From the NCBI GenBank assembly GCA_033442325.1, contig JAWQFM010000002.1:502442-566441 (forward strand): 64,000 bases of DNA. The letters are read 5' to 3'. The stretch comes from Salpingoeca rosetta (Eukaryota; Protista; Choanoflagellata). Below the pieces are notes generated by a model that was not told the DNA's origin, ran no database searches, and worked only from the letters and a program-made list of their open reading frames with translations. The number at the start of each line of letters is the position of its first letter. Position 1 is the first letter of the stretch. This document shows, in pieces, positions 3,001 to 38,635 of this stretch. The translations under genes and the position numbers were made by a program.

Positions 3001-6000
3001 CGTTGTTGGTGGTGACTTCAACGGCAATGCGGCCGCCAGAGCCGCCATAACCGCCGTTCCGGCCTTTGCCGCCATTGGCCTCTATGACACCTGTAATGCC
3101 GTGGAACTTTGGTGTGGTGATCCAAACCGAACCACCCGCACCACCGCCAGCTGCCAGCGGATATCCCGTGCCCGAGGCGCCGTTTGCCTGGATGGTCCCG
3201 TCGTGCGTCATTTTTTCGCCCACAATCAGACGGACCACACCGCCACCAAGGCCGCCGTCGCCGGCGCCAGCACCGCCAGCCTCAGAGGGCGCGGTCACAG
3301 CACCGTACACGTCATCGTCGTGTTGGGTAAAGCCGCCATGGAAGCCACCACGGCCAGCTGTGGTCGGCGTGCCCTTGGGGTTGGACGCAACGCCGTTGGT
3401 GAGGATACGTGAGCCGCCGCGGGTGATCAGGTCCCTGACGCGAACCACCGTGGGCGTGGTTGCGTCGTGCTGCACGGTGATGTACGAGTTGCCCTGCAGC
3501 TCAAGGCGGTCGTACTCGTGTTCGCCCGGCTCCAGGAAGCAGTTTTCGCCTGGTGAGAGGGTGAAGCCTGTGCGGTAGTCGCATGAGATGGCATAGGTGA
3601 TGTTCCAGTACGTGTAGTACACGCGCTCGACTGTCGTTTCGTTCCAAAAGTACGTCTGGTTGTGGATGCGCGTCTCTGTGTACGTGTACCACGACTCGAG
3701 ATCATCAACACACGTTGCCTCGCTGCTGTGGTTGAGATACTGGGCCCGAGGCCCAAGCACCATCGGCCACGGATAGCCTGTTGTCAAGTCAATGCCGGCC
3801 GTACTGTTGCCTGCCGTGCTGTTGTTGCCTGTCGTGCTGTTGCCAAGCATGGAGTCGGTCATGTTGCTCATGGTCAAGTTGAACAGCAGTCCAGCGTAAG
3901 GCGAGCTGGAGTTGGCTGACAGTTCTCCTGCCAGGTACAGCTCGAGATCCTGTGCAAACCGACACCCGCCCAGCACAAGCGCGTACGCAGTGTTGTTGAC
4001 AACCGTCACGTTGTACGGCAGAGAGCGAATATCATGCTTCTCCTCCGTAATCAGCTTGTTGTAGTATGTCGTGTGCGACACATTGCGCTCGTCCACAATG
4101 AGCTCGCCCTCGCGGCACGGGTTGTAGACCACATACGACTCGTTGTGGTGTAACTTGACGCCCGTTGGGCACGGCTGGTTGTTGAAGTACTGGTAGCATT
4201 TCGACGACACGCAGTCGTCACGGTTGGTTTGCTGGTCGCACGTGCGAGGCTGCCAGTCATACGAGAACACGGGGTCGTACACGGGATCCTCCTTGCAAGT
4301 ATGCTGGAATCGCTCTGCGGCTGTGCAGTTGGACTCGCGGCACACGTCCGCAAAGAAGTCGTCACAGTCTGGGCCCTTCTCGCAGTAGCGCTCGGGCCGT
4401 TCGGGGCACTCCGTCTCCGAGTTGAAGTCGTCGATGGGCTGGTCCTGGCAGCCGCAGGTCTGAGTGACGGGGTGCCAGAAGCACGTGCTGCCCTCAACAC
4501 GCCCGGCTTTCTCCACATTGACGTTTGGAGCGTCGCGTGCAGGCTCAGGGATGCCGGCAAAGTCGTATGACGCGTTGTAGTGCACGTTCAAGGAATCGAC
4601 GACGAGACGTGTGCTTAAAGGCGAGAGTGACTTCACCACACCCGTGTACAGCACCGTCACGTTCCGCATGGCGTAGGTGCCAGGCACTGTCTGACCTGAT
4701 GTGTACCCGGAGGATGTGATGTTCCACTTGCCGTCCTTGCCCACGAGCAGGTGCTCGAGCCCGTTGAGCTGGCCCTGCGAGACCATGGTTGCGCGCAGCT
4801 CCACGGTTGCGGGCAGGTCGGCAATGCTGCCCTCCTGCAGGAAGAGGTCAAGGCGGATGTCTCGCTCCTCGTCCTCGCTCGTGGCCGGCGGCAGCGTCAC
4901 GCGCTGGTCGCGGCCAATCACAAGGCGTGCTGTTCCGCCCGTGCCCAGCAGGTGCGTTGCCGTGAGGGCAGAGGGCTCCCCTGGTGCGGGGTACATGGCC
5001 AGCTGCGCGCCATCGCCAACACGCACCTCGTCAAACGAGTACACAAAGGCACCCGTGCCAGGCAGGTTAAGCGTGTCGTCGCCAAAGGAGAGGTAGCTGA
5101 ACGCTGGGTTGTGTGACACGTCGTCAAAGTCAAATGCTGCCTGTGCGGGGAAGGATGACGGCGTGCGCCCGCCATTGTTCAGCTCAAGAACGGTGTACGT
5201 GTTGCCATCCGCCTGGGTGCGTTCCGTGTACAGGATACCTGCAGCGCCCACCTCAAAGCCGTCGCCACCAACAGCGCTGATGGTGCCGAAGAAGCGGGAC
5301 TGTGTCTCGTCGTAGCTGAGTGAGATGATGCCACCAGAACCACCGCCACCGCGGAGGTTGTTGTACACGCCGCCGTCACCGCCGTCAGCTGCGAGGGACC
5401 CAAAGCCGTGCAGCGTCGTGGCGGTAATCCACAGGCTGCCGCCAGCACCGCCACCGCCGTCAACAGACACGCTCTCGCCAGAAACGTCGATGCGGCCCTC
5501 CAGCAGAACGGTGTCCGCGGAGATGCGAACGGCGCCACCACCGCGGCCGGCCTGGCCTTGCGACCCAGTGGATCCACCAGGCCCCATCGTCACGGGCGCG
5601 AAGATGGAGCCAAACGGTTGCGAGCGTGTCACAGACGTGGAGCCGCGGCCGCCGCAGCCGGCATGCGAGGCGCCGTAGCGGTTGCCCTGCACAGTACCCG
5701 GACCCGTGTTTGGCGCATAGCCGAGCGACGCCGCCGTGATGATGCTGTCGACATGCATGTTGACCTTTGTCGACGCAATCGTTGCGTTGCGCACGCGAAT
5801 CTCGGAGTATCCCTGCAGCTCCAGGTCATCCACCTTGAACGTGGTGGTGTTCATCGTATCCGTGGCCAGCCATGTGGCACCGGCTGACAGCACCAGTCGT
5901 GACAGCTCGACCAGGTTCTGCGCACCGCCCTGAGACGGTGACGGAACAATGGCCGCGTCCTCGTACATGGTGACTGTGCAGTCTGAGACCGTGAGCTCGC

Positions 6001-9000
6001 TCAGGCTGGTGACGCGGCCGCGGTTGTACAAGCTGTTCTTGTGCAGCGTGACGCGCGTGGGCAGACGAAGCTCGCCATCGCGGTACACGCGCAGGTGCAG
6101 CGGCAGGTACTCGTTGGACTTTTGAATCTCAAACACCTGGTTGTGGGCGACATGCAGGTGGCCGTAGTTTGTTGGCTCAGCGTCACCAACCATCTCCACA
6201 ACGCGCACAAACAGCGTGTCCGTGCCGGACGGCAGCTGCATGGCAAGGTGGGCAGACCCATGAATGGTCAGCGTGTCAAACGTGTAATCGACAACCTCAC
6301 CCAGCGGCGTCACCGCAGCGACGTTGGGCTGTTCCGGGATGGTGATCCACGTGCGGCCCTTGTCATGCTCGATGTCAGAATAGTCCACAAACTCAGACAC
6401 GCCGTTGGTACCGTCGGCGTCCTGCCCGCCATTGTTGATGGTGAGTGACGTCTTGGTCGTGTACGCGTCCATGGTGTAGAACGTGCCGGATGGCGCGGGC
6501 TCGTTTGCCCCAGCCCCACCACGAAGGTCAAGGCTGCCAATGAACTGATTGCCAGGGCACTCGTCAAGGCTGGCGCAGGAGCGGCCAACAGACGTGTACA
6601 CCGCAGCGCGCCCGCCAGAACCACCGCCGCTCTGAGAACCGCGACCAACGCCGCCGCGCACGGAGATGAGGCCGCTGCCAACGACCGTCCACGCCTCGAG
6701 AAGCACAGAGCCGCCGCTGCCAGCACCGCCGGAAACGCTGCCGTCAGAGAGGGACACCTGCGGAGAGGCGCCGTTGCACAGGACCTGGCCGTCGATGCGC
6801 AGCTCCCCTGTAGCGCGGATGTGCAGCACACCGCCACCGTAGCCGCCAAAGCTGCCGCCACCGCGGCTGCCGGCCTCCAGCGGGCGCACAACGTCGCCGT
6901 AGAAAGCGCCCGTGTCGACCGTGGCCACGGATCCACCGCGGCCAGCGTGGCCAGCACCCGATCCGCCCTTGCTGAACGCAACACCGTTACCGGGCCCAGA
7001 AGCGGACGCGCCAGAGAGGTCCAGCACAGCACCCTGGGACACGACCATGTCTGTTGTGTAGATGGTGAGCAGGTCCGCCTCGAGGCGCGAGCCGCCGTTC
7101 ATGCGAATTGTCGTGGCATTGAACGTGGCGGCCGAGGATGAGGAGCCCTGGCCACCAGTCTCCACAGAGAGGAGGCTGCCACCGGTCATGTGCAGCTCCC
7201 CGAGGGCAAAGTTGTCCACGGAAGGCCGCAGGCGCAGCACACCTGCGTTGCCGACCGTGGCATTCTCCACGCCGAGCACGGAGCCGGCAATGTCAAGCGC
7301 TACGTCGTTCAGCTGCACATACCCGGGTAGCGACGCTTCGCCGTTCGCGTGCACGACAATGTTGGCGGGCACAAACGCAGAGTCGCCAAGCGCAGCGTCA
7401 AGCCGCTGCTTGGGGGCAACGTGGATCGTGCCCGTGCTGTCGCCTTCGAGGTCATCGACATCCACGGCCACCATCTGGGATGGGTGCTGTGGCGCAAACA
7501 CGACGTGTGCCCCGCCACGTACGTCCAGCTGGTACAGCGACATGGTGACAGAGCCCGCGGTGCTGTCGCTCATGATCACTGCGCGAGCACCGTCGTGCTC
7601 AAGGTCGGGGCCGCCGGCCTCCGTGTTCACGGCCGCCATGTCCACCAGCACGTCCAAATTGCCGTTGTCTACGCGAATGATGTCACGGTTCGTGCCCACG
7701 GAATGGAGCAACAGCGTACCAGAGCCTCCGTTCTCGGCGAGTGCTTGCCCGCCGCGCGTCACCACATCACCGTCGTAGCTGTAGTCCTCATACCACAGGG
7801 CAATGCGGCCACCGCCGCCAGCACCGCCGCCAACGCAGTCGTCGCGCTTGTTGTCGGTGTCGTAGTTGTTCGTGGTCGAGCACCAGCGCCCGTCCGTGTC
7901 CAGGACACACTGCTCATGCACCTCGTTGTCGTAAACAAAGCTGGACGCACAGCGCACGCGCGTGTTTCCGTTGTTGATCAGGTAGTCCACCCCGTCGTTC
8001 ATGCTGGCGTCGCCGCCACGCACGTCCAGTGTGCCCGTGCCGGTCACGACATCCGCCTCAATCAGGATGGAACCACCAGAACCGCCACCAGAGGCGCCGC
8101 TTCCAGCACCGCCAACAGCAGCAATGGTCCCATCAAGCGTGGCGTTAATGGCTTTGATGTACACCAGACCACCGGCAGCGCCAGGCGTGCCTGAGCTGGA
8201 GGTGCCGCCAACGCTGCCAAACTTTGACGGGCGCCATGCTGAACCGTAGGCTGCGGCGACGCGGTCAAAGGCCTGGCTGCGACCAGCAAGGCCGCCGTGG
8301 CTGGCACCGCTCCCACCTTGGTTGGAGTTGTAGCCGTGCCCGTCACCAAACACATTGGTAGCGCGCACGGTGTCTGGCAGGTCGGCCAGCTCAGAGTACG
8401 TGGGGCCGTGTGCCGTGAGCTGCGCGCCCGTGTCCATCATGAAGCGAGACGCGTTGACGCGCAGCCACTTGGACTCCAGCGACCCACCGCTCTGCAGATG
8501 GAGCACGCGAGCGTTGATGTCCAGGTTTGGCTCCGTCGTGATGGCACTCAGTGCCTGCACCTTGCCCAGGTTGCTCACGTAGAGTGCATCGAGCTCAAGC
8601 GTGCGTACATGCTCGTCGATGAAGGCAAGTGTGACGGGTTTGGCTACCTCAAGCTCAGAGACGCCAGAAAGAGAGCCGCCAATGTCAACTGTATTGTACG
8701 ACAGGCCCTCCAGGTGCACATATGACGGCAGGTTCAACACAGATCCTGTACCTGACGCGAGTGAGAATGGGAATGGCACAGGTGTTTCCTTAATCTCGGA
8801 GTGGCTGTTGTCAAACACTTTTAGGCGGCCAGTCAGGTCACCCTGGACCTTACTCACGGCCATGTCAACGCCTGACCCGTCACTTGAGCACACGCCAACA
8901 GCCGCTTGCCCATGAATATCAAGGAGATCAAGCTTCAGCGTCGATGATCCAGTCAGTGGATCGCGATCGAAAATGACCCACGCATGGCCGTAATCACTGC

Positions 9001-12000
9001 TGGTGAATTCCAGACCCGGTACGGCAAGCCCAATGTCGCCATTGCTGACCATCAACTGCCGGAAACGAGACGTTTCATTGCCACTCTGGCGGAAGATCGT
9101 GCCGGCGCCACCGATGCGCAAGCTACCGCCGTGGGCCTCGAAGCTCCCAACAAAAAAATCTTCAGTAGCGTACGTCGCGATGCGGCCACCGCCACCACCA
9201 GAGCCACAAGAGCCGGTCCCGCTCCCACCGTTTGCAGTTAGAGCACCCAGACCTTCGATGATTGGTGTGATGATGTAAACACTGCCGCCAGCGCCACCGC
9301 CAGCATTCGAGCCGCCGTCTGCACCATTGGCCCGTACTTCACCATCAATCTCGACAGTGTTGAGAGCAACGATACGCAGTGCACCGCCACCACTACCGCC
9401 GCGCATTCCTGAAGCAGGGCCGCCGCCACTGCCAACGTCCGCTGGAGCGAGAAAGTTACCGTACCCAGGCACCTTTGAGCGGCCGTTTGAGCATGCATAT
9501 CCGCCTGAACCGCCATGGCTACCACCAGCGGATGACGTGCCGCCGCCGGGGCCGAGGCCAGCCGTCCATCCACCACCAGAGGCATCATAGACGCCGGCAG
9601 CCTCCACGGTGAAGTTGGTGGTGTACAGCGACATCCAGCTCACGCGGGCTGTGCCGCCGCCATGCACGACGAAGCTGCCCTGATAGCTGCGGTTGGTGTT
9701 GCCGTAGAATTCATCCGGGAAGGCCGTGAGGTTGACGCTGAGCGGTTCGTTGTCGGCGGCGTCACCGGCATACACCAACTCGCCGCTCTCCAGCACGCGA
9801 ATGCTTGCCATGTTGACCTGGCGAGGCGTGTGCGAGTTCACGGCCACATCCTTGTGCGCGAGCCAGAACTGGCTGTTGCGTGACACCTCCAAATGGCGCA
9901 GGCCGTGCAGCTCGCCCTTGACCACCACATCATTATCATAGACGATGGTGTGATCGGGAAGATACAGCGTCGAGCTGGTGGAGAAAGTGCGGATACCCAT
10001 GGGCAGGATGTTGTCGTCGCCATTCCGCCTGAGCGCACCAAACGACTGGCCATCAAACAGCGTGACATGCCCACTCCGGTCGCCCACAAATTTGTCTACG
10101 ACAAGAGATTCTTGCGCGATAGGGTACTTGTCAGATTTGCGCAGGGCGATGCTTGCACCACCAAACACGTGCATCTCGTCCAAGTGAATGTTTGTGTCGG
10201 TGATGCCCTCCCAATCAATCCACGTGCGTGCCGCATCCCACGCCGTGTCCGGGTACTCATTGTATGTCTCGTCCTGACCCTTTGTGATTGCTATGTGATC
10301 AAGCGCCACGTATTTCGGGTTGTGCAGGGGCGGAAGCGTCGATTGAACTGAAACAGACACAAGACTCAGGGTGTCGTTCACAAAGATGCGTGTCAGGTGC
10401 GTCCCTGTGCATGCCCCGCCTTGAATGCCATTCTTGGTGATGGAGCCCTTTCGTCCGACAATTGTGACATCCGTGGAAGATGGATAGCGTGAATCGCACC
10501 CAGAGTGCACGTCCAGATAGTACACATACACGGGTGTAGTGAACGTGATCTGGAACGACAAAAAGTCGCGGACAACAACGGCGCCGGGTCGGAAGAGAGC
10601 AGACAGGTCTGGCATGTCCACAGAAGACGTGACCACGAAACCGTTCGCCAGCGTGTACTTGCGCTGCCCAAACTGCTCGCCATACGACAACTTCAGCTCC
10701 TCCAACGCGTTCACATACGGCAGCGCAGGGCGGTTGCCGCGGTTGTTCACGATGAGCGTCTTATGCGCGTCTTGGAGCGGGTCCACGGCGATGGATGTCG
10801 CGTTGACGTCATACAACATCACCGTGCCTGCTGCAGCGTCCTCGTAAGCACCGCTGCCGCCACGGGCGGTCATGGTGCCAAGGAAGTACTTGCGGTTGGC
10901 GACAGAGACGCGAACACGCCCGCCACCGCCAGCGCCGCCAGCGTACTTTGCGCGGTTCGAGAGCACAACGGCGTTGCCACCGTCAGCGGTGATGTCGCCA
11001 GAGCCAATCAGCTCGCCCGCATCAACCTGGATGCTGCCACCAGCACCGGCACCGCACCCGTCAGCAGTGATACTACCGCTGTACCCGTTGGCCTGAATGC
11101 TGCCCTCGAGCGTCAGCAGCTCGGTAGCAATGACGTGCAGGAAGCCGCCACCCTGGCCAGCAGAGCACACAAAGTCTGAGTGCTGCGCCTGGCCGCCACC
11201 GCTACCAAAGTCCTGTGGATCAAGGAAGTTGTCGTGAGTTGGGGAGGTCATCTGGCGGTAGTACGTGCGACCGCCATTGCCGCCGTGACTGCCGCCGGTT
11301 GCGCTGCCTCGGCTGCCACGCACGAAGAGGCCAGCACCCGGGCCCTCGTCGGCGCCGTAGCCGCGGTAGTTGGCGTGGATCGTGCCGTACGCATCGACAG
11401 TCACGTTCTTCGCCTTGATGACTGCGTTGGTGGACCGCACAGCGGCACCACCAGAGACAATCACGACATCGCCAACGAGCGTGCGCCGGTCGCGAGACGC
11501 GCCAATTTCCAGCAGGCCGTAGTTGCGCACCTCGATCGTGCGAAAGGTGAAGCTGGTGGCAGACGAAAAGTCTGGGTAGTACAGCTCAAGCAGGTACAGC
11601 TCAGATCCGTCCGCAATGATGAGGTCGCCAACGTTGTTGAGGACACCCTCCAACCGCACTGTGACACCGGTGAGCTCTGCCTTGCCGCCAAGACTCAGCA
11701 TGCCACCAGCGTACACGCTGAGATGGAAGTTGATAATGGACCTGTTGACACACAGTATATGCTGGTTGTAGCCAATGTGAAGTTGTGCGGTGGCATCGCT
11801 GGTGAGGACGTCTGTGTCCAGAGTGAGGGCGCCATCCAAAGAGGCAGTGGAGAAGGCAAGATCGGCTTCGCCATACATGTGAATTTCCTCCAGCTCATCA
11901 ACCTGATCGCGCTCGAAGAACAGCCACGTGACAGATGGCACGTTGTTTGTGTTGTCAATGTCGGCGCTGGTGTTCCGCACAACGCCCTCTGGACGCAGGC

Positions 12001-15000
12001 CCAGGTTGTTCACGTACAACGTGCGGTTGAGTGCAGCGACAGAGGAGTTGGAGTTGAGCACCTCGTACTTGTGGATGTACGCCGTGCCAGAGGCGCCCGG
12101 CTCGTGCGGGCCAGTGCCACCTTGCACAAGCATCTGTCCAATATAGTGGTTGTAGTTGGTGTACACGGCAAGACGCCCGCCACTGCCACCACCGCCCTGG
12201 GCGATCGAGGAGCACTTGTACTGCAGGTCAAAGTCCTTCCTGCATGCCGGGTTTGGATCGCCCACAGCAACGGGGCTCACTTCGTACGCGCAGAACCACG
12301 ACTGGTCGCAGAGCTCGCGCACGTGCGACGTGGCTGAGCCAGGCTCCGCACCGCAGTTGGCGCCGTACGTGGCGGTGATGACGTGGATGCCATAGCGGCA
12401 CTCCAGAAGCACAGACTTACCGCCAGACTCGCCCGCAACGTGGATGGTCTGAATGCCAGTGCCTGCAGGGCCGTAGCCCTCGCCGCCGCTGACATCAAGC
12501 AAGCCATGACCGTCAAAAATGTCAGTCTCGATCAGCAAAGAGCCGCCAGATCCGCCACCAGAGCGTGGCGAAACCCAATCACCGCCGCGCGACGTGATCT
12601 CACCGTCCACGCGCAGTGTCTTGTTGACAACGAGGTGCAAGCGGCCGCCACCGGCGCCACCAATGTACGGGAACACAGATGCACCGCCACGCGAGCCAAA
12701 CTCGCGCGGCTGGCGGAAGTCGCCGTAGCCTTCGCCTACCTCGACGAGCTGGCCCAGGCCATACCCGCCGGTGCCACCGTGGCCGCCGCCCGAATCACCA
12801 ATACCGCATGCCTGGCCGTACGTGCAGGAGGAGTGCTGCGTGGCACCTTCGCCCTCGCCAGCAAAGATGCCATGGCCACTGCCGTCTGGGGACAGGTAGG
12901 ATGTGCCGTCCAAGGTGATGCGCGCATCGGGCTCAACCTCCACGTCGTCGAAGAACAGGCGGGCATCGTTTGTGTCAAGGATGCCGCCAGCGAAGATGTG
13001 CAGGTTGTGTCCCTGCAGCTCTGCCACGTGGCCGTGATGCGACTCGAGATGCAAGTGGCCGCCAATCTTGATGTTGATGTTGCTGATGTCAAAGGGGTCA
13101 TCGCCCTGGGCGCGAAGCAGATGCACGAAACAATCGCGCTCAATTGTCAGGTGCTCCAGCAGGGCCATGTCGCCCTCGACAGTGATGTTCGTGCTGCGGC
13201 ACGCCACGTGCTCCGGAGGGGTGAACGACCCATCATCGCGCACGAGCAGCGAGAAGGGGAAGTATTTCGTCTGCAGGCCCGTGTTGTTGCTGAGGTCGCG
13301 GTGCGTGGGCGATGTGTCCACGTGCTGCCGCGGGCGCACCACCATGACACCGGTGTTGTCGCCCTCAATGTGGTGCGTCGTCAGCTTGGCGCCGGCACCC
13401 TCCATGTTGATGCTGCCTTGGCGGTGCGCGTGCGTCTCGTTGAAGACGTAGTGGTCCTCCTCGTCGAGGAACTGCTGGTCGTCCTCGGGCACAAGCCAGG
13501 CGGACCCGTGCGTCGTCACATACTGCGTCTGCGCGGAAGCATCAGGGTCTTCGCTCCAGTACAGCTCAATCTCATTCAGGGCCGTCCATGAGCTACCAGG
13601 CGCCCGCTCAAAGGTGATCTTCACGCGCGTCGTCATCGCGTCAATCACAATGGGGCGAACAACACCGTGCAGGCAGTTGCGGGTGTCAACGGGCGAGTCA
13701 ACCAGCTGCGTCTCCTGCTGCCCGTTGTACACGGACACCCAGTAGCGCACAGCGTACGCGTTGTCGCAGCGCGGGTAGATGAGCGCGTGGTCGAGGTAAA
13801 TCTCCTGCGGCATGTAAAAGTCAACCTGCACGCGGCTGCCCGATGACGTGCCGAACCAGCTGGTCAGGCTGCCATCCACCAGGCGCCAGGTGTCATGATA
13901 CGATGTACCGGCAACGTTGGTTCGCACTTCAACGCCCATTGGAGAGTTGTACACGTTGGACGTCGTATGCTGCCCCGCAGACATGTCGAGCTTCTGTACC
14001 TCCGCCAGGCGTGGTGATGGCACAAAGTCGGCGTTGTTGTCCACGTACAGGATGTTGTACGGGTCGTCTGGCACGGTGGCGTTATGCACGTAGACGGTAC
14101 CCGCACCGCCGCGCACAGCGGTACCGTAGCCAAGACCACCAAACGCTTGCAGCTCACCGGTGAAGTGTGCCGTGTGCTGCGTGGAGTTGTGCTCGTTGGC
14201 GTAGTAAATGGCCAAGCGGCCGCCGGCACCGCCGCCAGAGCCGCTCTTGCCGTTGCCGCCGTTGACAGCAATCTCGCCATCGCCCTGCAGCTCCTCGGTC
14301 TCGATCCAAATCGAGCCGCCAGCACCGCCACCGCTGCCAGTTACAATTGCTTCGCCGCCGTTGGCATGGATGCTGCCATCTACACGCAGGGCGCCCGTGA
14401 CGTTGAGCCAGAGAATACCGCCGCCGCGCCCGCCACCACGGTTTGAGCTCGTGCCCCGGCCACCACCAGAACCGAATGTGGTGGGGCGAAGCGTCGAACC
14501 GTACGCAGGAGGCGAGTCGACACGGTAGCGGGCAAGGCCACCGCGGCCACCGTGAGCACCGCCTGAGGCGTAGGCGCCGTTGGAGCCGGACACCTGCCTC
14601 AGGCCAGGTGACAGGCCAGACCCAAGCTCATAGCCACCAGAGTCTGCGCTGATGTGGCCGTACTTGTCGATGACAACGTCGTCGGCAGTAAAGTCCATCC
14701 AGTTGGTGGAAATGTAACCGCCAGCACGGATGTTCAGCCTTGATACGTTCAGTGAGATGACCACAGAGTTGGCAGGCGTGTCGTAGTCAATGTGCGTGAC
14801 AGGGTACAACGTGCCGTGCGGCTTGATGGTCAGATCCGAGATGATGTAGGCGCCCTTGCTGAGACCGGGGCTGGAGCCACGGCTGGTGATGCGCAGCCAG
14901 CCATCCTTGTCCAGGGTGATGTCATTGCTGCGTGCAAACGTGCCGTTCACCTCGATGAAGACCTCACGCAGGTTGATGCGCCCGTGAGGAATCATGTTCA

Positions 15001-18000
15001 ACCAGCCTCCCTCGTACAGGTACGCGTTGATGGGGAAGTAGATGTCGCTCGAGTCGAAGCTCACAGTCTGGTTGCGTGCAATGTGCATGCGGCCTGTGCG
15101 GTCGCCCGCCACCTCCACCGCGTCCACTGTGTGCAAGGGATGAGCAGTGCCGTACACCCCAGGCAGGATGGCAAGGTGCGCGTTGCCGCGAATGTCCAGC
15201 TGTTCAAACATGTAGCTTGTGTCACCAGAATCAGGGTGGAGCCAGGTGACACAGCCAACATCGCGGATATCACCGAAGTTGCCGTCCTTGATGGTGGTGA
15301 GCCGGCCGAGGTTGCGGTTCACGGCCCACGGCAGGTGGCGGTCCCCGTTGTCCACGCGCAAGATGCGGTGTGTGTGGGTGCCGTTGCTGCCGGAGAGGAA
15401 CACCGTACCGGCGGCGCCGTGTTCAATGGGGCTCTTCCCGCCATACGCAGTGATGGTGCCGTTCCAGTTGTGCAGGTCGTCGAACATGCTATGGTAGATG
15501 GCGATCCGACCACCAGAACCGGCACCACCGCCATCATCTTGACCATCGCCGCCGTTGGCTTCAATCAGGCCATGCCCGTGCAAGTCGTTGCATGTGATGA
15601 AGACGCTACCACCAGATCCACCGCCAGCGTAGGGCGCGTCGGGGGTCTGACCGTTGACGAACACGTTGCCATCAATGCGCAGCTTGTCCGTGTACAGCTC
15701 CAGCGCACCGCCGCCGTGGCCGCCAAGACCCACACGCGAAACCATGTTGGCGCCGCGGAATGTCTGCCCCGTGATGTAGTCGCCAAACACCAGGCTCCCG
15801 TAATCATCACCTTTACCGCCGTTGCTGCCGTACTCCAATGGCCGGTACAAGTCGCCGTAGGGCTGGCCAACATGTGCTGCACCAGCGCCGTGGCCACCAG
15901 TACCACCGTGGCCGCCACCAGAAGCGCCGCGCTGATGTGCCACACCCTGTCCACGACCTTCCTGTGGATCATAGTCGGTGAGGCCAGTGCCTCATCGTTC
16001 AACGACTCGCGCACCTCGCGTGACTGGTAGCCGCCATCGTTCAGGTTGATGTTGCCGCCAGAGCCAATCTCCACATCATCGGAGAAGAAGCGCAGGCGCG
16101 TGTTGGAGATGAGGTGGCCCTCGCCAAACACGGTGAAGTTGGTGGCGTTGAGCATGAAGCCTTCGTGACCAACCTCGTGCGCAAACAGCTCCAGCGTGCC
16201 ATCAGCCATGATGGTCAGGTCTTCCAGCAATGCGCTGCCTGGCGTGCCCGTGGCGATGGAGCCGTTGGTGTCCACACGCACAAAGCCGTCCGTGTGCACG
16301 TATGCCTCGGTCAGCCCGTACACTTCACCGCTCACGTGCAGCTGCACACCGGTGAAGAAGGCACGCCGTGGGAACGTCATCATGCCACCCTCGTACACGC
16401 GCGTGTTGAAGGGGATGTCGGCGCTGGCATACACCACGTCAATGTCCTGGTTCGGGCCAACGTGCAGCCAACCAGTGCGGTCGCCATACGCGTTGTCGAA
16501 GGTGATGTGCTGCTGGCGCGACTGCGGATCGGGATGCAAGGCCAGCTGAGCACCGCCAAAGAGCTCCAGCTTGGTAAAGTTGTGGAACTTGGTCGTGTCG
16601 GCAGACATGAGCCACGTCTTGGCAGAGTCCAGCGACAGGTGCTTGTAGCGGTCCCCGGGTCCGCGAGCATCCGTGTAGACTTCAATAGCGCTGAGCGCAA
16701 TGAGAGCATCGCGGCGCCTGAGGCGAAAGACGATCTCCGACACCTCGCGCAGCACGGGAAGCTCGACGTAGGCACCAGTCACGCACGTGTGGCGCATCTC
16801 CACGTAGTTGCTCGTGACATCCACGTTCTGCGACTCGCCGGTCAGGTGCGTCTCCACCTTGAAGTCTGTGCGGTACTGGCAGTGCGGGAACACGCGGATG
16901 TAAGACACAAACTTGGTCGCACGCAGATCCATCGTCAGCGTCGAGGTGCCACGATCCACGGCAAAGTAATCGTGGTACTCCAGCGAGTACGTGTGCGTGA
17001 AGAGGTTGGCAATGTAACGGTTGCTGTAGGTGGCGTGGGACGACGTCACCACGACACCCTGTGCCTCGTACACGGTGTTGCTGCTTGTGGCGCCACCATC
17101 CAGGTCGATCCGTGAGCCGCGGTTTGGAATGGCGTCTGTCAGCGCGTACTGCGGGTCACCGGCCTCGTCCGTGTTGTCCAGACGCAGGGTGTTCTCGCCC
17201 GTCGTGGTGTGCTCAATGTACACGGTACCAGAAGCACCGGGCTCTGCAAGGTCCGCACCATAGCCGCCGTGCACGTCGTACTTTCCGTAGTAGAACGTGT
17301 GCAGCGCCTCGGAAGAGTTGTGGTAGATGGTGATTCGGCCACCACTGCCACCACCGCCGCCGCGCGGGAGATCACCAGCGCCACCTTGCACAGAGATGTC
17401 GCCCGTGTGCCCACCGACGAACGCGCCCGTGCGGAAGAGGATGGAGCCGCCAGAACCGCCGCCAGCACCGTCGCGCACGCCGAGACGCTGCCAAATGTTG
17501 TCGGAGAGCACCGTGTAGCAGTACACGTTGTCGTTACCGCTGGACACGCAGATGTCCCTGCCATTGAAGGCGGTGCTGCGCACGCCCGAAATGTCCAGCT
17601 CCTTGAAGATGTGGTCAAACTCGCCCGTGTCAAGCTCGTACCGGTAGAGGCCGGACGAGCGCACGTCGTAGATCTTGTTCTCAACCACGTGCAAGCCGCC
17701 ATACAGCGGGGCGCTGTCAAAGTCGTGACGGCCACCCTTGAGCTCGATGGGCGAGCCCAGGATCGCGCCCGTGTCGCGGGACAAGCGGTACACCTTGTTG
17801 CCGTAGTAGCACATGGCGTAGACGTAGTCAAAGTCGACTGCAACGCCACCCACCGTGCAGCCCAGGTTGGCCGACCACTGCCTGTCCGTGTTTGGGAAGG
17901 GCCCACGCTTCTCCACAACGCGGCGACTCCAACGGGCCAGGTAGTAGAAGTCGTCGCGGTCACCCGTCACCTGCATGATGTCGTCCGCACCGGCGTTGAA

Positions 18001-21000
18001 GGAGCCGATCCGGGTGTATTCGTCGTCATACCGGAATACGGTCGTGCCGGACCAAGATGGGTACCAGTACTCGCGCAGGGCGGGCATGTAACCGCCACCA
18101 TAGCTGTATGTCTCCATGGTCTTGACGGGGTGGTCCCACAGCACGACATCTTCGTGCTCAACGACAACGCGCGTGAAGTCGATGACGTTGTAGCTGTCTG
18201 CGAGGATGTCGCCGTCAATGTGCGAGATGCCGGACACGTGGAACTCAAGACGCCCACCGCCAGCACCGCCCTGTTCACCGCCACCGCCAGAGCCATAGAG
18301 CGTGGCGTTGTAAATGTCGCCATAGGGCTCGCCGTTAGGGAGGAGCCACAGATCGTTGCCGTCACGTCCAGCTCCACGGCCACCACGACCACCGTAGCCA
18401 GCACCAGAGTGGCCACGCAGGTTGGCGAAACCGTGGCCCGGACCCTGCATGGCAGAGTAGCCGCGGCCAGAGGCGTTGACAACGCCACCGTCGTCAATGG
18501 TGAAATAGTCGAGGTAGAACTGCATGAAGGTTGTGTCGACCAGACCGCCACCCTCCACGACCAACCCAGCAGCCGTTACCTTGAAGGGCTCCGGGTGTGC
18601 AAGCGGCTGCAGAGCAGAGATCTTCGAGTCGTCCTTCACACGGACGGTGCCGTTGAAGGTGAATGACATGTCTGGTAAGCCCTGCGACGCGCCGGTCAGG
18701 TTCATGTACAGCGCAGCGCCGTGGATGAGGGTGAGGTTCTGGATGTGGTCAATGCGGCCCTCGCAGACCACAAACACGCCGTCCATGTCCGTATCGTGCG
18801 CCAGGCCATAGTATCCGCCTTCGTACACGTAGGTGCTGAATGGCGCATCAATATAGCTTCGTTGCAGGTCCATGGACTGGTTGCGGCCAAGGTGGATCAC
18901 GCCAGTGCGGTCGCCAATCATGTGGCGGTAGAACAACTCCACATCCGTGTACACGGGCTCAGTGACAACAGCAAGGTGTGCGTAGCCACGAATTTGCAGT
19001 TCCTCAAAGTGGAACATGTGCTGCCCGCCAGCAAAGCGGTGCGTGCCAGACTCGGACAAGATCCACGCGCGACCACCGTCCTCAGAGAGGTCCTCGTAGT
19101 TCTCAATACGCCTCTTGAGGGGCGACTGGCCGTCGTTGTCAATGATGAGCGTGCGGTGTGTGTAGACCATGTGATAGACAAACACGGTGCCGGGGCCACC
19201 CGCTTCAAGGAGACCCGCTCCGCCGGCAGCGAACATGCGGCCCGTGTACGTGGCGTTGTTCACAAAGTACACGGCAACGCGCCCGCCGGCACCGCCGCCA
19301 CCGCTCTTGTTGGGAATGATTGGGTGGAGGTACGCATCGTCCACGTGGAAGTAGCCTGCACCGCCATGCGAGGTGATGTTGCCCGTGCCCTTGAAGGTGT
19401 TGCAGTGCAGCCAGATGGAGCCGCCGCTGCCGCCGCCGCTGAACTTGACTTCGGCGTCTGCGCCAGAAGCAGAGATGACACCATCCAGCTGAATCATATT
19501 GGTGACGTTGAACCAGAGCACACCGCCTCCACGGCCGCCGTGGGCCGTGTCGTCCATCTCCCCACTACCGCCAGCAGACCCAAAGAGGCCTGGCTCGTAA
19601 AAGTCGCCGTACGGCTGTCCAACGCGCGACTGACCATAGCCCGAGCCAGCAGAGCCGCCGTGGCCCGCGCCAGAGGCGCCATTCGCGCTGGCAATGCCCG
19701 CACCGGCGTTGATGACGCCGTGCAGGGAGTAGCCGGTGCCGTGGCGCACGTGGTGGCCAAGCCCATCGGCGTTCATGTGACCGCCATCGTCGATGATGAG
19801 GTCCTGCCCGAGGAACGTCACCTTTGAACCGCGCATCTCCGCGCCGCCCTCAATGTAGGTGCCGATGGTCTCGATGGTGATGCCGAGGTCGTCGACGGGG
19901 TCTGTCTCCATGTGGAACTGGCCCTGGTCGGCGACGCGGAGGTAGTCGAACTTGAAGTGGCTGCGCGCCTGCCCCGTCGTGCGGCCGCCCTCGTTGGCCC
20001 AGAAGTCGCCAAAGCGGTGGATGGTCATGTTGCGCACGTGCGACAGGCGGCCAGACATCTGGATGAACACGCCGTGCACGTCCGTGAAGTGGCCAAGGCC
20101 CACGTGGGAGTTGTTGTACGCCCAGATGTTGAATGGGACATCAATCTCAAGCCGCTCTAGGTCCATGGTCTGGTTGCCGCCAACGTGCACGGTGCCCGTG
20201 CGGTCGCCGATCATGAAACGCGTGTAGATGTCCACGTCGCGCGTGTATGGCGGGTCCGAGAGGAAGGCCAGATGACCGTTGCCGTGCACCTGCAGCTCCT
20301 CAAAGTGGAAGCGGTAGTTGTATCCCGCAAACCGGTGCGTGCCAGAAACGGGCAGAATCCACGCCCGACCACCGTCCTCAGAGAGGTCGTTGTACGTGTA
20401 CTCCTTGCCATCAGCAGCTGTCAGCTCAATGGCGTTCACGTAACGATGCAGGTAGTTCTTGCGCCAGATGGGCTCGCCGCCGCAGTTGTCAATGATCAGG
20501 GTACGGTGCTCATGCACGTGCGACCATGCAAACGCCGTCCCAGGGCCGCCAACCTCGTGGGCGCTGCGGCCACCACACGTACTGAAGTGGAAGCCTGTGG
20601 ACGTGCGGTTGCGATAGAAGTACAGCGCAACGCGGCCGCCCGCGCCGCCGCCGCCAGGGTGCTCAGCGTGGCGATGACCATCGCCACCACGGGCATAAAT
20701 GGCGCCGTAGCCGTGGATGTAATCGGCGTGCACCCAGACAGAGCCGCCGGCACCGCCGCCGCTCGAGTCCTTCTGGCCCTCAACGCCGTTGGCGGAGATG
20801 ACGCCGTCCAAAAGCAGGTCCTCAGTGACATTAACCCAGATCAGGCCGCCGCCACGGCTGCCATGCTCGTCGTCAATGGTCTTACCCGTGCCACCAGCGC
20901 TGCCAAGCACGTAAGGCTCATACACGTCGCCGATGGCGAAACCAGTCTTGCTCTGCCCGAAACCCTTGCCGCCAGTGCCACCGTGACCGGCGCCAGACGC

Positions 21001-35401: not shown

Positions 35402-35459
<58 letters not shown>

Positions 35460-36321: not shown

Positions 36322-37329
36322 CGCTGCGCGCAGCGTGCGCCATGTGCGGCGCGAGCCAACCACGGCAGTCGCAGCGTCCTTGTGCGGTGACTGCTGTCGC
36401 TGTTGGCGTGGTCGTGTATTTGACTTGCTGCACGGCCTGGACAGTGGTGGCCGTGGGTTGTTGTGTCTGGAAGGCCACACAGCAGGGGCGGACGATCCTC
36501 GGCTCTCAGGGCGAGGATGGCCGTGCCCGTGTGTGGGTGTGGGCAGCGTGTCCCCGCCACCATCGGGCAGGGTTCGCAGCATCATTGTGCCGACGCTCTG
36601 CTGCGCCGGGCTTGCTTTCTGCTGCGTACCTTCTCGTGTCCTGCGGATGGTCAATCGCAGGCTGCACACTAACAGAAGTGGGGAGGGGGGAGATGCACAG
36701 GGGGGAGGGGGAGGAAGGCGTCAGGCACGTTGCTGTTGAAGAACACGAGTCAAGTCCACAGTGGGTGAAGACGTGCAGTGCACTCGTGCAAAAGTGACAG
36801 GAGGGGAGACGAGAACAAACGGGAAGGGTGTGGGAAAAGGAATGGGTCGCTGACACAGCAGCTACAATACAAGCGAGTGGATGTGGGTGGGAAGGGGGGA
36901 GAGAGTGTGTGTGTGCCTTCTTTCTTCCGAGCAACTCAACACACGCACACACGCGCAAAGCCAAGGGCAAAGAGCGAGTAAGCGTGAGCGGGAAACAGAG
37001 TTTGGAATGAGAGATGGCGGAGATGGAGCCAATGTGAAGAGCAGAAAAAAAAAGTCAACACCCCACAACAAAAACCACGCAAACACCCACGCACAGAACA
37101 CAGCGGAGGCGATGGCGCTGCTTGTGTTTCGTGCGGCTTCCTTTGCCTGCAGGCACACAAACAGCAAAGCAAAGAGCAAAGCAAAGAGCGTTCGCCGCCA
37201 CCGCAAGAAAAAAAATTCTGTCCTGGGAGCTGTCGATAATTTGTGAATATCTTTTATGTAGAAAATTGCACATGGGTCCGCCATCCCCAAACAACGCAAG
37301 TTGCACATGTCGAGGTGGGCGAGGGAGGT

Positions 37330-37374
<45 letters not shown>

Positions 37375-37636
37375 TGCGTGTGTGTGTATGTGTGTATGTA
37401 TGTCTGCTGTAGCTCTGTGTGTGTGTGTGTGTGTGTGTGTATCTGCTGTAGCTCTGTGTGTCTGTCTGCTGTAGCTCTGTGTGTGTATCACCATGTGTGT
37501 GTGTGACGATCGGGTTGCTTGCTTCTCTCAAGCTCCTTCACGTCATGCACAACAACCACAAACTCCACACGCTGCGCACGCTGCGCACACACGGACTCCC
37601 CCCCCCTTCTCTCTCTCTTCTGTCTCTCAATCCATC

Positions 37637-38538: not shown

Positions 38539-38635
<97 letters not shown>

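What the first reader, a model, noticed from the sequence alone, without database searches (positions are those of the whole stretch)
7800..18200. Binding domains inserted as cassettes at fixed loops of the Gly-rich module
Seen: the FN2 (7835-7960) and SUEL lectin (12205-12450) domains both sit between the 'GG.G/A' and 'GGGxGGRIA' strands of their modules. Three discoidin-like domains all sit just after the 'L.V.N' motif. A propeller-like domain sits between 'IDGDILA' and 'GAGGGSGGSI'. None has an evident flanking intron, so ordinary exon shuffling does not explain them. Inference: the repeat acts as a display scaffold with permissive loops carrying varied glycan/protein-binding heads, like a multivalent recognition array.
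Basis: partly seen in the sequence, partly recalled or inferred. Interest (0 to 1): 0.75.

Follow-up and report, generated by a model that had tools for sequence, protein, structure and literature searches.

The report
Binding domains nested in beta-helix loops
A giant secreted protein of the choanoflagellate Salpingoeca rosetta is a chain of glycine-rich beta-helix modules, and sugar- and protein-binding domains are nested at the same corner of successive helix turns, a layout shared module for module with uncharacterised giant proteins of marine animals.

Summary
Window 2210-33038 (minus strand) is part of one giant S. rosetta gene, read here as three ORF pieces. They are separated by one 53-nt intron and one frameshift, and together hold 16 modules of about 400 aa.

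Where the inserts sit:
- SUEL and FN2 lie at the same alignment column (model position 106).
- The three discoidin-like domains lie at one site (169-175).
- The propeller-like domain lies at position 71.
- In 249 modules from this gene and 18 eukaryotic homologues, all 44 inserts of 30 aa or more found within single module alignments sit at five junctions of 403. Four large inserts where the alignment split sit at about position 136.

Domain identities:
- FN2 passes Pfam's threshold.
- SUEL is supported through relatives: 984 found, and 9 of 10 tested pass PF02140.
- The discoidin-like insert folds confidently (pLDDT 83.5) and matches CBM32 and F5/8C structures (Z about 14).
- The propeller profile matches Pizza6 propellers (E 2.9e-5).

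Two discoidin-like inserts are ancient, because orthologous animal modules carry them. SUEL, the propeller and the third discoidin-like insert are absent from those modules.

A binding function, and projection of the inserts from the core, remain inferred. The argument against exon shuffling is weak.

The parts
2210..15943 (-). ORF piece C of the giant gene (4577 aa), holding modules C1-C9. The gene continues 3' beyond the window start.
   Evidence: P0001, a predicted protein of this locus, runs on past the end of C. Module hits are found down to G000:C2:481259.
15565..22158 (-). ORF piece B (2197 aa), coding down to about 16015. It holds modules B0 (C-terminal part), B1, B2 and B3.
22155..33038 (-). 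ORF piece A (3627 aa). About 2300 aa of a different repeat of roughly 100 aa come first, then modules A1-A3 and the start of A4.
15962..16014 (-). Proposed 53-nt GT..AG intron joining pieces B and C. It is the only intron inside 7800-18200.
   Evidence: Removing 53 nt restores the frame and the motif 'GGY...GASGGGHGG'.
22158..22200 (-). Frameshift inside a module (the A4/B0 junction). There is no room for an intron, so it is either an assembly error or a real break.
   Evidence: Frame A ends '..GSAGGASNGH' and frame B continues 'RGGNGGGSIWMNIT..'.
17470..18174 (-). Beta-propeller-like insert (235 aa) in module B3, at HMM junction 71 (the corner after rung 1).
   Evidence: Four S. rosetta copies were found. 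Their profile matches Pizza6 designer propellers at E 2.9e-5. Pfam gives weak PQQ_2 and Glu_cyclase_2 hits.
16648..17133 (-). Discoidin-fold insert 'type I' (162 aa) in module B3, at junction 175.
   Evidence: AF2 model pLDDT 83.5. Foldseek top hits are CBM32 at E 3e-6. VIA gives Z 13-14.7 to F5/8C, CBM32, IFT25 and APC10 structures. The insert is present in the orthologous animal modules.
13532..14014 (-). Discoidin-fold insert 'type II' in module C2, at junctions 169/175.
   Evidence: domain HMM 104.7 bits. The orthologous animal modules carry it.
12197..12460 (-). SUEL / rhamnose-binding-lectin-type insert (88 aa) in module C3, at junction 106.
   Evidence: Pfam E 0.004, below the cut-off. 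PDB match to the lectin CSL3 at E 6e-4. hhalign against eight S. rosetta SUEL domains gives P 8.6e-4. 984 relatives were found, the best at E 5.6e-50; all 10 tested hit PF02140 and 9 of them pass its cut-off.
10274..10720 (-). Third, more divergent discoidin-fold insert (149 aa) in module C4, at junction 169.
   Evidence: domain HMM 70.2 bits. The orthologous Mactra and Owenia modules lack it.
7829..7990 (-). FN2 insert (54 aa; the Pfam match covers 7835-7939) in module C6, at junction 106.
   Evidence: Pfam 31.9 bits against a cut-off of 22.2. The whole-genome scan gives 32.6 bits, over the cut-off.
3464..4474 (-). Cys-rich insert of about 340 aa in module C8, at junction 363.
   Evidence: No Pfam hit. 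A near-identical copy lies at G000:C34:747607-752076.
35563..36321 (-). First coding exon. It holds a putative signal peptide (MVAVLLVVLSSCSATSAAS, judged by eye) and the first Gly-rich unit, which ends at junction ~136.
34020..35496 (-). Canonical F5/8 type C domain on two exons. It sits after junction ~136 of the first module and is preceded and split by introns.
   Evidence: PF00754 profile positions 23-57 on one ORF piece and 59-125 on the next (32.5 bits). The arrangement matches Mactra and Saccoglossus.
33727..34275 (-). Exon encoding a HYR domain.
   Evidence: PF02494, 36.3 bits against a cut-off of 21.7.

Best explanation
The region is the middle of one very large, signal-peptide-bearing gene of Salpingoeca rosetta. 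More than 10,400 codons lie inside the window, and the gene runs on beyond it. Its product is a chain of at least 16 modules of about 400 aa.

Each module begins with four glycine-rich rungs of a right-handed parallel beta-helix. The rung pattern is 'GGGxGGx(I/L)x(I/L)...Gx(I/L)xAxGGxG'. An ordinary beta-helix stretch follows.

The corner that follows the short second strand of each rung tolerates whole domains nested into it. These corners are model junctions 71, 106, 136 and 169-175. In this window they hold a beta-propeller, a SUEL-type lectin, an FN2 domain and three discoidin-fold (galactose-binding-domain-like) domains.

Because these four corners are the same position in successive rungs, the nested domains should line up along one edge of the rod.

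The most likely function is an extracellular, multivalent adhesion or recognition fibre. The helix would act as a stiff spacer, and the nested lectin-type domains would be the ligand-binding heads. Candidate ligands are glycans of prey bacteria, of the cell's own matrix or theca, or of neighbouring cells.

Shown here: the positions, the domain identities, the conservation of the insertion corners across homologues, and the beta-helix core.

Inferred: projection of the heads from the core, ligand binding, and the cellular role.
For: Equivalent insertion columns.

Large inserts sit at only a few junctions. All 44 in-alignment inserts of 30 aa or more lie at 5 of 403 junctions in 249 modules, and 4 large split-hit inserts lie at about 136.

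Four-rung periodicity. The consensus places junctions 71, 106, 136 and 175 after the same 'x(I/L)xAxGG' strand. DSSP of the model shows a long strand plus a short strand in each rung.

Beta-helix core. The core has pLDDT 80-95. Its best structural matches are autotransporter and TPS adhesin beta-helices: Vag8 Z 10.9, UpaB 10.1, pertactin 9.6, TibA 9.5, Fap2 9.2.

Domain identities.
- FN2.
- SUEL.
- Discoidin fold.
- Propeller.

The loops are reused.
- Different families occupy the same loop. Junction 106 carries SUEL, FN2 or, in animal homologues, Cys-rich knobs.
- The same family occupies different loops. The propeller sits at 71 here and at about 136 in three paralogous modules.
- A canonical F5/8C domain sits at about 136 in module 1 here and in the Saccoglossus homologue (Pfam). 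The Mactra homologue has an insert of the same size at the same place and carries a PF00754 hit, whose position I did not check.

Secretion: an N-terminal hydrophobic leader.

Precedent: bacterial RTX adhesins project their ligand-binding domains out of 'split' host domains, including a beta-solenoid (PMC12077191).
Against: - No binding, localisation or expression data were available.
- The inserts were modelled at low confidence in the whole-module model (pLDDT 25-60), and no coordinates could be inspected. Projection from the core is therefore an inference from sequence periodicity.
- The structural matches of the core (Z 9-11) are only modestly above the background stated for that tool.
- The discoidin-like inserts have no Pfam hit and could serve a structural role rather than a binding one.
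- One module is interrupted by a frameshift, so part of the gene might not be expressed as read.
- Two of the discoidin-like inserts are ancient fixed features rather than exchangeable cassettes.
Confidence: 0.65

Rival explanations
1. Glycan-degrading enzyme array. The beta-helix modules would be catalytic, like pectate lyases, GH28/GH87 enzymes or the G8-bearing hyaluronidases CEMIP and TMEM2. The nested lectin and CBM32-like domains would then be carbohydrate-binding modules that target the enzyme, not adhesive heads.
For: - Foldseek's weak top hits for the module are GH87 glucanases and tailspike depolymerases. VIA lists pectin lyase, polygalacturonase and phage depolymerases at Z about 7.
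- Some animal homologues give faint or weak G8 hits.
- The second half of every module carries a strongly conserved charged motif, 'GDRTG..H.G.NQ..D'.
- CBM32 is typically appended to glycoside hydrolases.
Against: - No glycoside-hydrolase, lyase or G8 family reaches even E 0.01 on the window ORFs.
- The best structural matches are non-enzymatic adhesin passengers.
- Sixteen or more tandem catalytic domains in one chain would be unusual.
- FN2 and the propeller are not typical CBMs.
Confidence: 0.15
2. No cassette behaviour. The shared positions would simply reflect descent: a module that once acquired an insert was duplicated or inherited, so 'fixed permissive loops' would be an artefact of common ancestry.
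For: - The type I and type II discoidin-fold inserts sit in modules that are one-to-one orthologues of insert-bearing modules in Mactra, Owenia and Patiria.
- The three paralogue propellers all sit at about 136.
Against: - SUEL and FN2 are unrelated folds at the same junction, in modules C3 and C6. The orthologous animal modules of C3 carry no insert there.
- Animal orthologues of C5 carry a Cys-rich knob at junction 106, whereas C5 itself has none.
- The same propeller family occupies junction 71 in this gene and about 136 in the paralogues.
- Junction 136 holds an F5/8C domain in module 1 but a propeller elsewhere.
- These patterns require several independent gains or replacements at equivalent corners.
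Confidence: 0.12
3. Decaying or mis-assembled locus. The long ORFs would be remnants of a pseudogene or an assembly chimera, and the 'inserts' would have no present function.
For: - A frameshift lies inside a module at about 22158-22200.
- A near-identical copy of the C7-C9 region lies at the very end of contig C34.
- Another first-stage note reports a 411-bp tandem duplication at the 3' end of piece C.
Against: - Open frames of 4577, 3627 and 2197 codons in 62% GC DNA are not expected without selection.
- Every module keeps the family's conserved glycines and motifs.
- Module order is collinear with animal orthologues.
- The inserts retain domain-defining residues: FN2 passes the Pfam threshold, and SUEL finds relatives at E 5.6e-50.
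Confidence: 0.05

Closest known systems
Uncharacterised giant proteins of marine invertebrates. Examples: Mactra antiquata ACF0H5_014598, Owenia fusiformis 'unnamed protein product', Patiria miniata LOC119725183, Saccoglossus LOC144342564, Mya arenaria MAR_011998. Several are auto-named 'Tenascin-X' or 'TENX-like'.
   Same: - They are true homologues, with HMMER bit scores of 950-1761.
- They have the same ~400-aa module, and the module order is collinear with window modules A1-C5.
- They carry the same discoidin-fold inserts, type I and type II, at junction 175 in the orthologous modules.
- Saccoglossus carries a Pfam-confirmed F5/8C domain at junction ~136 of the first module. Mactra has an insert of the same size there.
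   Different: - They lack the SUEL insert, the propeller and the third discoidin-fold insert in the orthologous modules.
- Junction 106 carries short Cys-rich knobs ('C..ERRCLQC..YYW..Y.C') in them, rather than SUEL or FN2.
- Their genes are intron-rich (Patiria locus).
- I found no functional study in five literature searches.
Bacterial RTX adhesins with ligand-binding domains projecting from 'split domains' (AhLap, MpIBP and others; PMC12077191; Graham et al. 2024, as cited there).
   Same: - They are giant repetitive extracellular fibres.
- Ligand-binding domains (CBMs, vWFA) with adjacent N and C termini are nested inside a host domain and project sideways.
- In one case the host is a beta-solenoid.
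   Different: - They are analogues only.
- The host domains are Ig-like or Ca-binding RTX beta-rolls, and secretion is by a type I system.
- The heads cluster near the C terminus. Here the hosts are Gly-rich right-handed beta-helix rungs in a eukaryote, and the heads are spread along the chain.
- No RTX nonapeptide family was detected.
Autotransporter and two-partner-secretion beta-helix adhesins (Vag8, UpaB, pertactin, TibA, Fap2, HMW1, EtpA).
   Same: They are the best structural matches of the predicted module core (Z 7.4-10.9). They are right-handed parallel beta-helix rods used for adhesion, with functional loops or sub-domains emerging from the helix.
   Different: - There is no sequence similarity.
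- They are bacterial outer-membrane secretion substrates.
- They lack the Gly-rich 'GGGSGG' rungs and the tandem module organisation.
The Gly-rich ~170-aa unit of giant bacterial surface proteins (an AgmC N-terminal-like region; found in proteins that also carry RHS, CARDB, caspase or DUF7619 domains).
   Same: The first 170 model positions of the module match 684 domains in 101 further hits, most of them bacterial or metagenomic proteins. NCBIfam gliding_AgmC_N matches at E 5.5e-8.
   Different: - Most of these hits lack the second half of the module.
- The AgmC model score is far below its cut-off (32 against 275 bits), so this is not an AgmC equivalog.
- I did not examine these hits for insertion behaviour.
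G8/PbH1 beta-helix proteins (fibrocystin/PKHD1, CEMIP, TMEM2).
   Same: They are large extracellular beta-helix proteins. Faint or weak G8 hits occur in some animal homologues.
   Different: No G8 or PbH1 hit on the window ORFs at E 0.01. They have no Gly-rich rungs.

Membership tests
Fibronectin type II domain (PF00040) | Profile score over Pfam's gathering cut-off | tested here: met
   31.9 bits against a cut-off of 22.2 on the isolated insert. 24.8 bits on the whole ORF. 32.6 bits, 'over cut-off', in the genome scan at C2:510276-510380, which is window 7835-7939.
Fibronectin type II domain (PF00040) | Four conserved cysteines and the aromatic core (C..F.Y....C......WC.TT.NYD.D....C) | tested here: met
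   Read directly from the translation, 'RCASSFVYDNEVHEQCVLDTDGRWCSTTNNYDTDNKRDDC'. The consensus itself is from my own knowledge of the family.
SUEL / rhamnose-binding lectin domain (PF02140) | Profile score over Pfam's gathering cut-off | tested here: not met
   17.9 bits against a cut-off of 31.4, E 0.004, covering profile positions 28-80 only. The insert is not among the nine canonical SUEL hits of the genome scan.
SUEL / rhamnose-binding lectin domain (PF02140) | Homology to bona fide family members (transitive) | tested here: met
   phmmer against 1.84 billion representatives found 984 relatives at E<=1e-3 and 175 at E<=1e-10, the best at 5.6e-50. All 10 relatives tested hit PF02140, and 9 pass its cut-off at 40-70 bits. 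The PDB search finds the rhamnose-binding lectin CSL3 at E 6e-4. hhalign against eight S. rosetta SUEL domains gives P 8.6e-4.
SUEL / rhamnose-binding lectin domain (PF02140) | Binding of L-rhamnose or D-galactosides | not testable with these tools
   Needs recombinant protein and a glycan array.
F5/8 type C (discoidin) domain (PF00754 / CBM32) | Profile score over Pfam's gathering cut-off | tested here: not met
   None of the three inserts gives a PF00754 hit, even at E 10. In the Saccoglossus homologue the PF00754 hit lies at junction ~136, not at the junction-175 insert. By contrast, the domain in module 1 of this gene (34020-35496) does hit PF00754, at 32.5 bits.
F5/8 type C (discoidin) domain (PF00754 / CBM32) | Galactose-binding-domain-like beta-sandwich fold | tested here: met
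   AF2 model of the B3 insert: pLDDT 83.5, pTM 0.82. Foldseek finds 167 PDB matches at E<=1e-3, led by CBM32 modules at E 3e-6. VIA gives Z 14.6 to an F5/8C domain (3nng; rmsd 3.0 over 136 residues). This is tied with IFT25, CBM32 and APC10/DOC at Z 13-14.7. The fold class is therefore settled, but the exact family within it is not.
Beta-propeller (NHL / PQQ / Pizza type) | Significant profile match to a solved propeller | tested here: met
   The profile of four S. rosetta copies matches Pizza6 designer six-blade propellers at E 2.9e-5 and 5.8e-5. A sensor-kinase propeller matches at 0.016 and the BBS7 propeller at 0.27.
Beta-propeller (NHL / PQQ / Pizza type) | Membership of a curated propeller family; blade number | tested here: inconclusive
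   Pfam gives PQQ_2 at E 0.032 (2 of 4 copies) and Glu_cyclase_2 at E 0.011 (1 of 4), all below their cut-offs. The insert was modelled at pLDDT 25-49, so the blades could not be counted.
Right-handed parallel beta-helix adhesin-like rod | Predicted stacked rungs with structural matches to solved beta-helices | tested here: met
   The core has pLDDT 80-95 with regular strand pairs in each rung. VIA gives Z 9.2-10.9 to Vag8, UpaB, pertactin, TibA and Fap2. Foldseek alone found nothing at E<=1e-3.
RTX adhesin with split-domain display | RTX nonapeptide Ca-binding repeats, type I secretion signal, Ig-like extender domains | tested here: not met
   No such Pfam families on the three ORF pieces. 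The organism is a eukaryote with an N-terminal leader. This is a resemblance of design only.
Tenascin-X (a name some databases give to homologues) | EGF repeats, FN3 repeats, C-terminal fibrinogen globe | tested here: not met
   None detected on the window ORFs or on homologues P0004 and P0008. The name appears to be an artefact of glycine-rich composition.

The most novel reading that the evidence does not exclude
A pre-metazoan giant 'display rod'. A protein family older than the split between choanoflagellates and animals keeps the order of a dozen or more beta-helix modules conserved one-to-one. One edge of its glycine-rich rungs serves as an evolvable rail, into which lineages have repeatedly nested different binding domains (SUEL, FN2, propeller, F5/8C, Cys-knobs). 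At least some of these gains occurred without introns. That would make it a eukaryotic counterpart of the bacterial split-domain adhesins, and a previously unrecognised component of the ancestral holozoan adhesion and recognition toolkit.
Probability: 0.4. Interest if true: 0.75.

Novelty: new variant of a known kind. Interest (0 to 1): 0.6.

Why it matters
Nesting of ligand-binding domains in a host scaffold is established for bacterial RTX adhesins. Five full-text literature searches found no description of it for this holozoan family, whose module has no Pfam model and whose animal members are unnamed or misnamed.

If the reading holds, it gives three things.
- A defined, testable rule for where functional heads sit in proteins of 5,000 to over 10,000 residues in choanoflagellates, molluscs, annelids, echinoderms, hemichordates and chordates.
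- Evidence that a giant extracellular adhesion-type protein, with its discoidin-fold heads already in place, predates animals.
- A natural example of a beta-solenoid edge that accepts unrelated folds, which is of interest for protein engineering.

S. rosetta is genetically tractable. A role in prey capture, substrate attachment or rosette matrix could therefore be tested directly.

Tried and rejected
- Pfam on the three whole ORFs found only FN2. The inserts had to be scanned separately.
- PDB sequence searches of a bare module and of the discoidin-like insert found nothing.
- Foldseek on the 866-residue module model gave no match at E<=1e-3. VIA-wide and a single-domain model were needed.
- I tried to build a by-reference alignment of the discoidin-fold insert from animal genomic DNA. 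This failed because the Patiria domain is split over three exons. Aligning the window domain against whole homologue proteins worked instead. P0006 was misaligned and was dropped.
- A word-based search with the SUEL region found nothing among proteins of 274-871 aa. The exhaustive search then found 984 relatives.
- Large parts of the flanking and paralogous genome stretches came back as N, so the full gene and its paralogues could not be read.
- Families considered and rejected:
  - Tenascin-X: no EGF, FN3 or fibrinogen domains.
  - G8/PKHD1-like: no hit on the window.
  - ALK-type or Trichomonas Gly_rich (PF12810), recalled from memory: no Pfam hit.
  - AgmC equivalog: 32 against 275 bits.
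- Five literature searches found nothing on this family.
All searches were made piece by piece, by reference.

Full report
ORGANISM AND GENE

The window is G000:C2:502442-566441 of a 55.4-Mb, 68-contig assembly. The NCBI protein PTSG_13036 of Salpingoeca rosetta (P0048) is identical at 3257 of 3257 residues to an ORF on contig C34 of the same assembly. The genome is therefore S. rosetta, as an earlier follow-up note of this scan had said.

On the minus strand there are three very long ORFs:
- A: 22155-33038 (3627 aa)
- B: 15565-22158 (2197 aa)
- C: 2210-15943 (4577 aa)

B and C are joined by a 53-nt GT..AG intron at 15962-16014. Removing it restores both the frame and the module motif. A and B meet inside a module with a frameshift near 22158-22200, where there is no room for an intron. 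That is either an assembly error or a real lesion.

Upstream exons encode, in order:
- a hydrophobic leader (MVAVLLVVLSSCSATSAAS, from about nt 36321; judged by eye) and a first Gly-rich unit;
- a canonical F5/8 type C domain split by an intron (PF00754, profile 23-57 and 59-125; 34020-35496);
- a HYR domain (33727-34275).

Downstream, the gene continues past the window start. P0001, a predicted protein of this locus, extends about 2,460 aa beyond C. Module matches run to C2:481259.

Every search was made piece by piece, by reference.

THE MODULE

Anchoring on the 'G.GHGG.GG' motif gives 16 modules: A1-A3, A4/B0 (split by the frameshift), B1-B3 and C1-C9. From a MAFFT alignment of these I built a 404-position HMM.

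The first ~175 positions read as four repeats of one rung. The pattern is 'GGGxGGx(I/L)x(I/L)........Gx(I/L)xAxGGxG' (consensus positions 40-71, 72-106, 107-136, 137-175).

I ran AlphaFold2 on module B3, using the 16 window modules as its alignment. The core came out at pLDDT 80-95, with a long and a short strand in each rung. The two inserts came out at pLDDT 25-60.

Foldseek found nothing at E<=1e-3 for this model. VIA-align against 48,161 chains put adhesin beta-helices first: Vag8 Z 10.9, UpaB 10.1, pertactin 9.6, TibA 9.5, Fap2 9.2.

Pfam has no model that hits the module. NCBIfam's AgmC N-terminal model hits weakly, at 32 bits against a cut-off of 275.

- The SUEL-like insert (C aa 1162-1249; nt 12197-12460) and the FN2 insert (C aa 2652-2705; nt 7829-7990) occupy the same HMM junction, 106.
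- The three discoidin-like inserts (B aa 1676-1837; C aa 644-804; C aa 1742-1890) occupy junctions 169/175, directly after 'L.V(D/N)N'.
- The propeller-like insert (B aa 1329-1563) occupies junction 71.
- A further Cys-rich insert of about 340 aa sits at junction 363 in module C8.

Junctions 71, 106, 136 and 169-175 all follow the short 'x(I/L)xAxGG' strand of successive rungs. So they are one structural corner repeated four times. This is my inference from sequence periodicity and the predicted strands. I had no coordinates to inspect.

HOMOLOGUES

A word-based search with piece C found giant proteins in these groups:
- bivalves (Mactra, Mya, Potamilus, Mytilus);
- an annelid (Owenia);
- echinoderms (Patiria, Lytechinus, Asterias, Amphiura, Diadema);
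- a hemichordate (Saccoglossus);
- amphioxus, Ciona and an anemone;
- the S. rosetta paralogue PTSG_13036;
- many bacterial giants.

In 249 modules from the window and 18 eukaryotic homologues, all 44 inserts of 30 aa or more that lie within a single module alignment sit at junctions 71 (1 insert), 106 (11), 169 (10), 175 (18) and 363 (4). Where the HMM hit split, four large inserts (158-260 aa) sit at about junction 136; a few shorter gaps (27-73 aa) lie at about 125 and 220-225.

Junction ~136 holds the following:
- a Pfam-confirmed F5/8C domain in Saccoglossus (aa 256-386);
- an insert of the same size in Mactra;
- the F5/8C domain of module 1 in this gene;
- the propeller-like domain in three modules of the S. 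rosetta paralogues on contig C34.

Junction 106 in animal homologues carries short Cys-rich knobs, or a 231-aa Cys-rich insert.

So one loop carries unrelated domains, and one domain family sits in different loops.

The first ~170 positions of the module, without the second half, also match 684 domains in 101 further hits, mostly bacterial or metagenomic proteins.

ORTHOLOGY OF MODULES

I compared match-state sequences of the window modules with those of the homologues. Window modules map in order onto the Mactra, Owenia and Patiria modules. In Mactra, A1 maps to module 0, A2 to 1, A3-B2 to 2-5, B3 to 6, C1 to 7, C2 to 8, C3 to 9, C4 to 10 and C5 to 11.

- The animal orthologues of B3 and C2 carry the type I and type II discoidin-like inserts at junction 175. 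These two inserts therefore predate the split between choanoflagellates and animals.
- The orthologues of C3 (SUEL) and C4 (third discoidin-like insert) carry no insert.
- None of the 249 modules other than B3 has a large insert at junction 71.
- The SUEL insert, the third discoidin-like insert and the propeller are thus gains on the choanoflagellate side, or losses in animals.
- The animal orthologues of C5 carry a Cys-knob at junction 106, while C5 itself has none.
- C6 (FN2) has no clear orthologue.

DOMAIN IDENTITIES

FN2. Pfam gives 31.9 bits against a cut-off of 22.2. The genome scan finds it among six FN2 domains of S. rosetta.

SUEL.
- Directly it scores only E 0.004, below the cut-off.
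- The PDB search finds the rhamnose-binding lectin CSL3 at E 6e-4.
- hhalign against eight canonical S. rosetta SUEL domains gives P 8.6e-4 over the C-terminal half.
- An exhaustive phmmer search found 984 relatives, the best at 5.6e-50. All ten tested hit PF02140, and nine pass its cut-off.
- I conclude it belongs to a divergent SUEL subfamily.

Discoidin-like.
- Pfam gives no hit.
- A model of the B3 insert, built with ten animal homologues as its alignment, reached pLDDT 83.5 and pTM 0.82.
- Foldseek gives 167 PDB matches at E<=1e-3, led by CBM32 at E 3e-6.
- VIA gives Z 13-14.7 at rmsd 2.3-3.0 Å over 124-136 residues. The matches are an F5/8C domain (3nng), CBM32 modules, IFT25 and APC10/DOC.
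- The fold class (galactose-binding-domain-like) is settled. The family within it is not.

Propeller-like. The profile of four S. rosetta copies hits Pizza6 designer propellers at E 2.9e-5. Pfam hits to PQQ_2 and Glu_cyclase_2 are weak, and the language-model neighbours are propeller families. The blades could not be counted.

INTRONS

Inside 7800-18200 no insert has a flanking intron, because the frames are continuous. The inference that exon shuffling is excluded is weak, for two reasons:
- the F5/8C domain of module 1 in this same gene is preceded and split by introns;
- the orthologous type I and type II inserts of Patiria each lie on three exons.

Intron loss across the nearly intron-free 3' 33 kb is an adequate alternative.

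MECHANISM AND COMPARISON

The best reading is a secreted, very long beta-helix rod. Its Gly-rich rungs offer one permissive corner per rung, where lectin-type and protein-binding domains are nested. The product would be a multivalent adhesion or recognition fibre.

The closest known design is the bacterial RTX adhesin. There, ligand-binding domains with adjacent termini project from 'split' host domains, and in one case the host is a beta-solenoid (PMC12077191). That is analogy, not membership. The true relatives are the uncharacterised animal giants, several of them misnamed Tenascin-X.

Rivals:
- a glycan-degrading enzyme array with CBM-like inserts (0.15);
- shared positions explained by ancestry alone (0.12);
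- a decaying or mis-assembled locus (0.05).

Five literature searches found no description of the family. The scan's own index had no note on it.

VERDICT

The architecture and the domain identities hold. Cassette behaviour is shown for junctions 71, 106 and 136, but not for the two ancient discoidin-fold inserts. Binding function and projection of the inserts remain inferred.
- Novelty: a new variant of a known kind.
- Interest: 0.6.

Noticed in passing
window 22158-22200 (minus strand): A frameshift interrupts a module at the junction of ORF pieces A and B. Frame A ends '..GSAGGASNGH' and frame B resumes 'RGGNGGGSIWMNIT'. The stop of A overlaps the ATG of B (ATGA). It is either an assembly indel or a genuine break of the giant gene.
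   Followed up: partly
window 33100-38700: The 5' part of the gene is intron-rich, and its introns are full of (CA)n/(GT)n microsatellites. The following ~33 kb of coding sequence holds a single 53-nt intron. This is a strong 5'-to-3' asymmetry of intron density within one gene.
   Followed up: no
window 34020-36321: The first module carries a signal-peptide-like leader and a canonical F5/8C domain after the third Gly-rich rung, followed by a HYR domain. An F5/8C domain in the third-rung loop of the first module is also seen in the Saccoglossus homologue. The Mactra homologue has an insert of the same size there.
   Followed up: yes
window 3464-4474; G000:C34:747607-752076: A Cys-rich insert of about 340 aa with no Pfam hit sits at a fifth junction (363) in module C8. 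A near-identical copy, with its flanking modules, lies at the very end of contig C34. That suggests a recent segmental duplication or an assembly duplicate.
   Followed up: partly
window 26100-33038 (ORF piece A, aa 1-2300): The N-terminal 2,300 residues form a different array of repeats of roughly 100 aa ('..SVTVG..LTLDKAVYDASSTSWSS..GTFNAGL..'). They give no Pfam hit. I did not analyse this region.
   Followed up: no
window modules A1-C5 compared with P0002, P0003, P0004: The order of about a dozen modules is collinear between the choanoflagellate gene and mollusc, annelid and starfish genes. So the modules are individually orthologous rather than homogenised repeats.
   Followed up: yes
P0019-P0120 (most hits other than the named eukaryotes): The Gly-rich half of the module (model positions 1-170) occurs hundreds of times in giant bacterial and metagenomic proteins. 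These also carry caspase (C14), RHS/YD, CARDB, DUF7619 and Ig-like domains. Pfam has no model for this unit.
   Followed up: partly
G000:C34:680000-752076: A second cluster of giant paralogues of the same module family lies on contig C34 and includes PTSG_13036. About a third of the fetched DNA there, and most of the 30 kb upstream of the window start, is withheld as N. The paralogues could therefore be read only in part.
   Followed up: partly
G000:C17:208295-209243; C32:106670-126897: S. rosetta has at least five further FN2 domains in other genes, and nine canonical SUEL domains elsewhere. Possible donors of both insert types therefore exist in the same genome.
   Followed up: no
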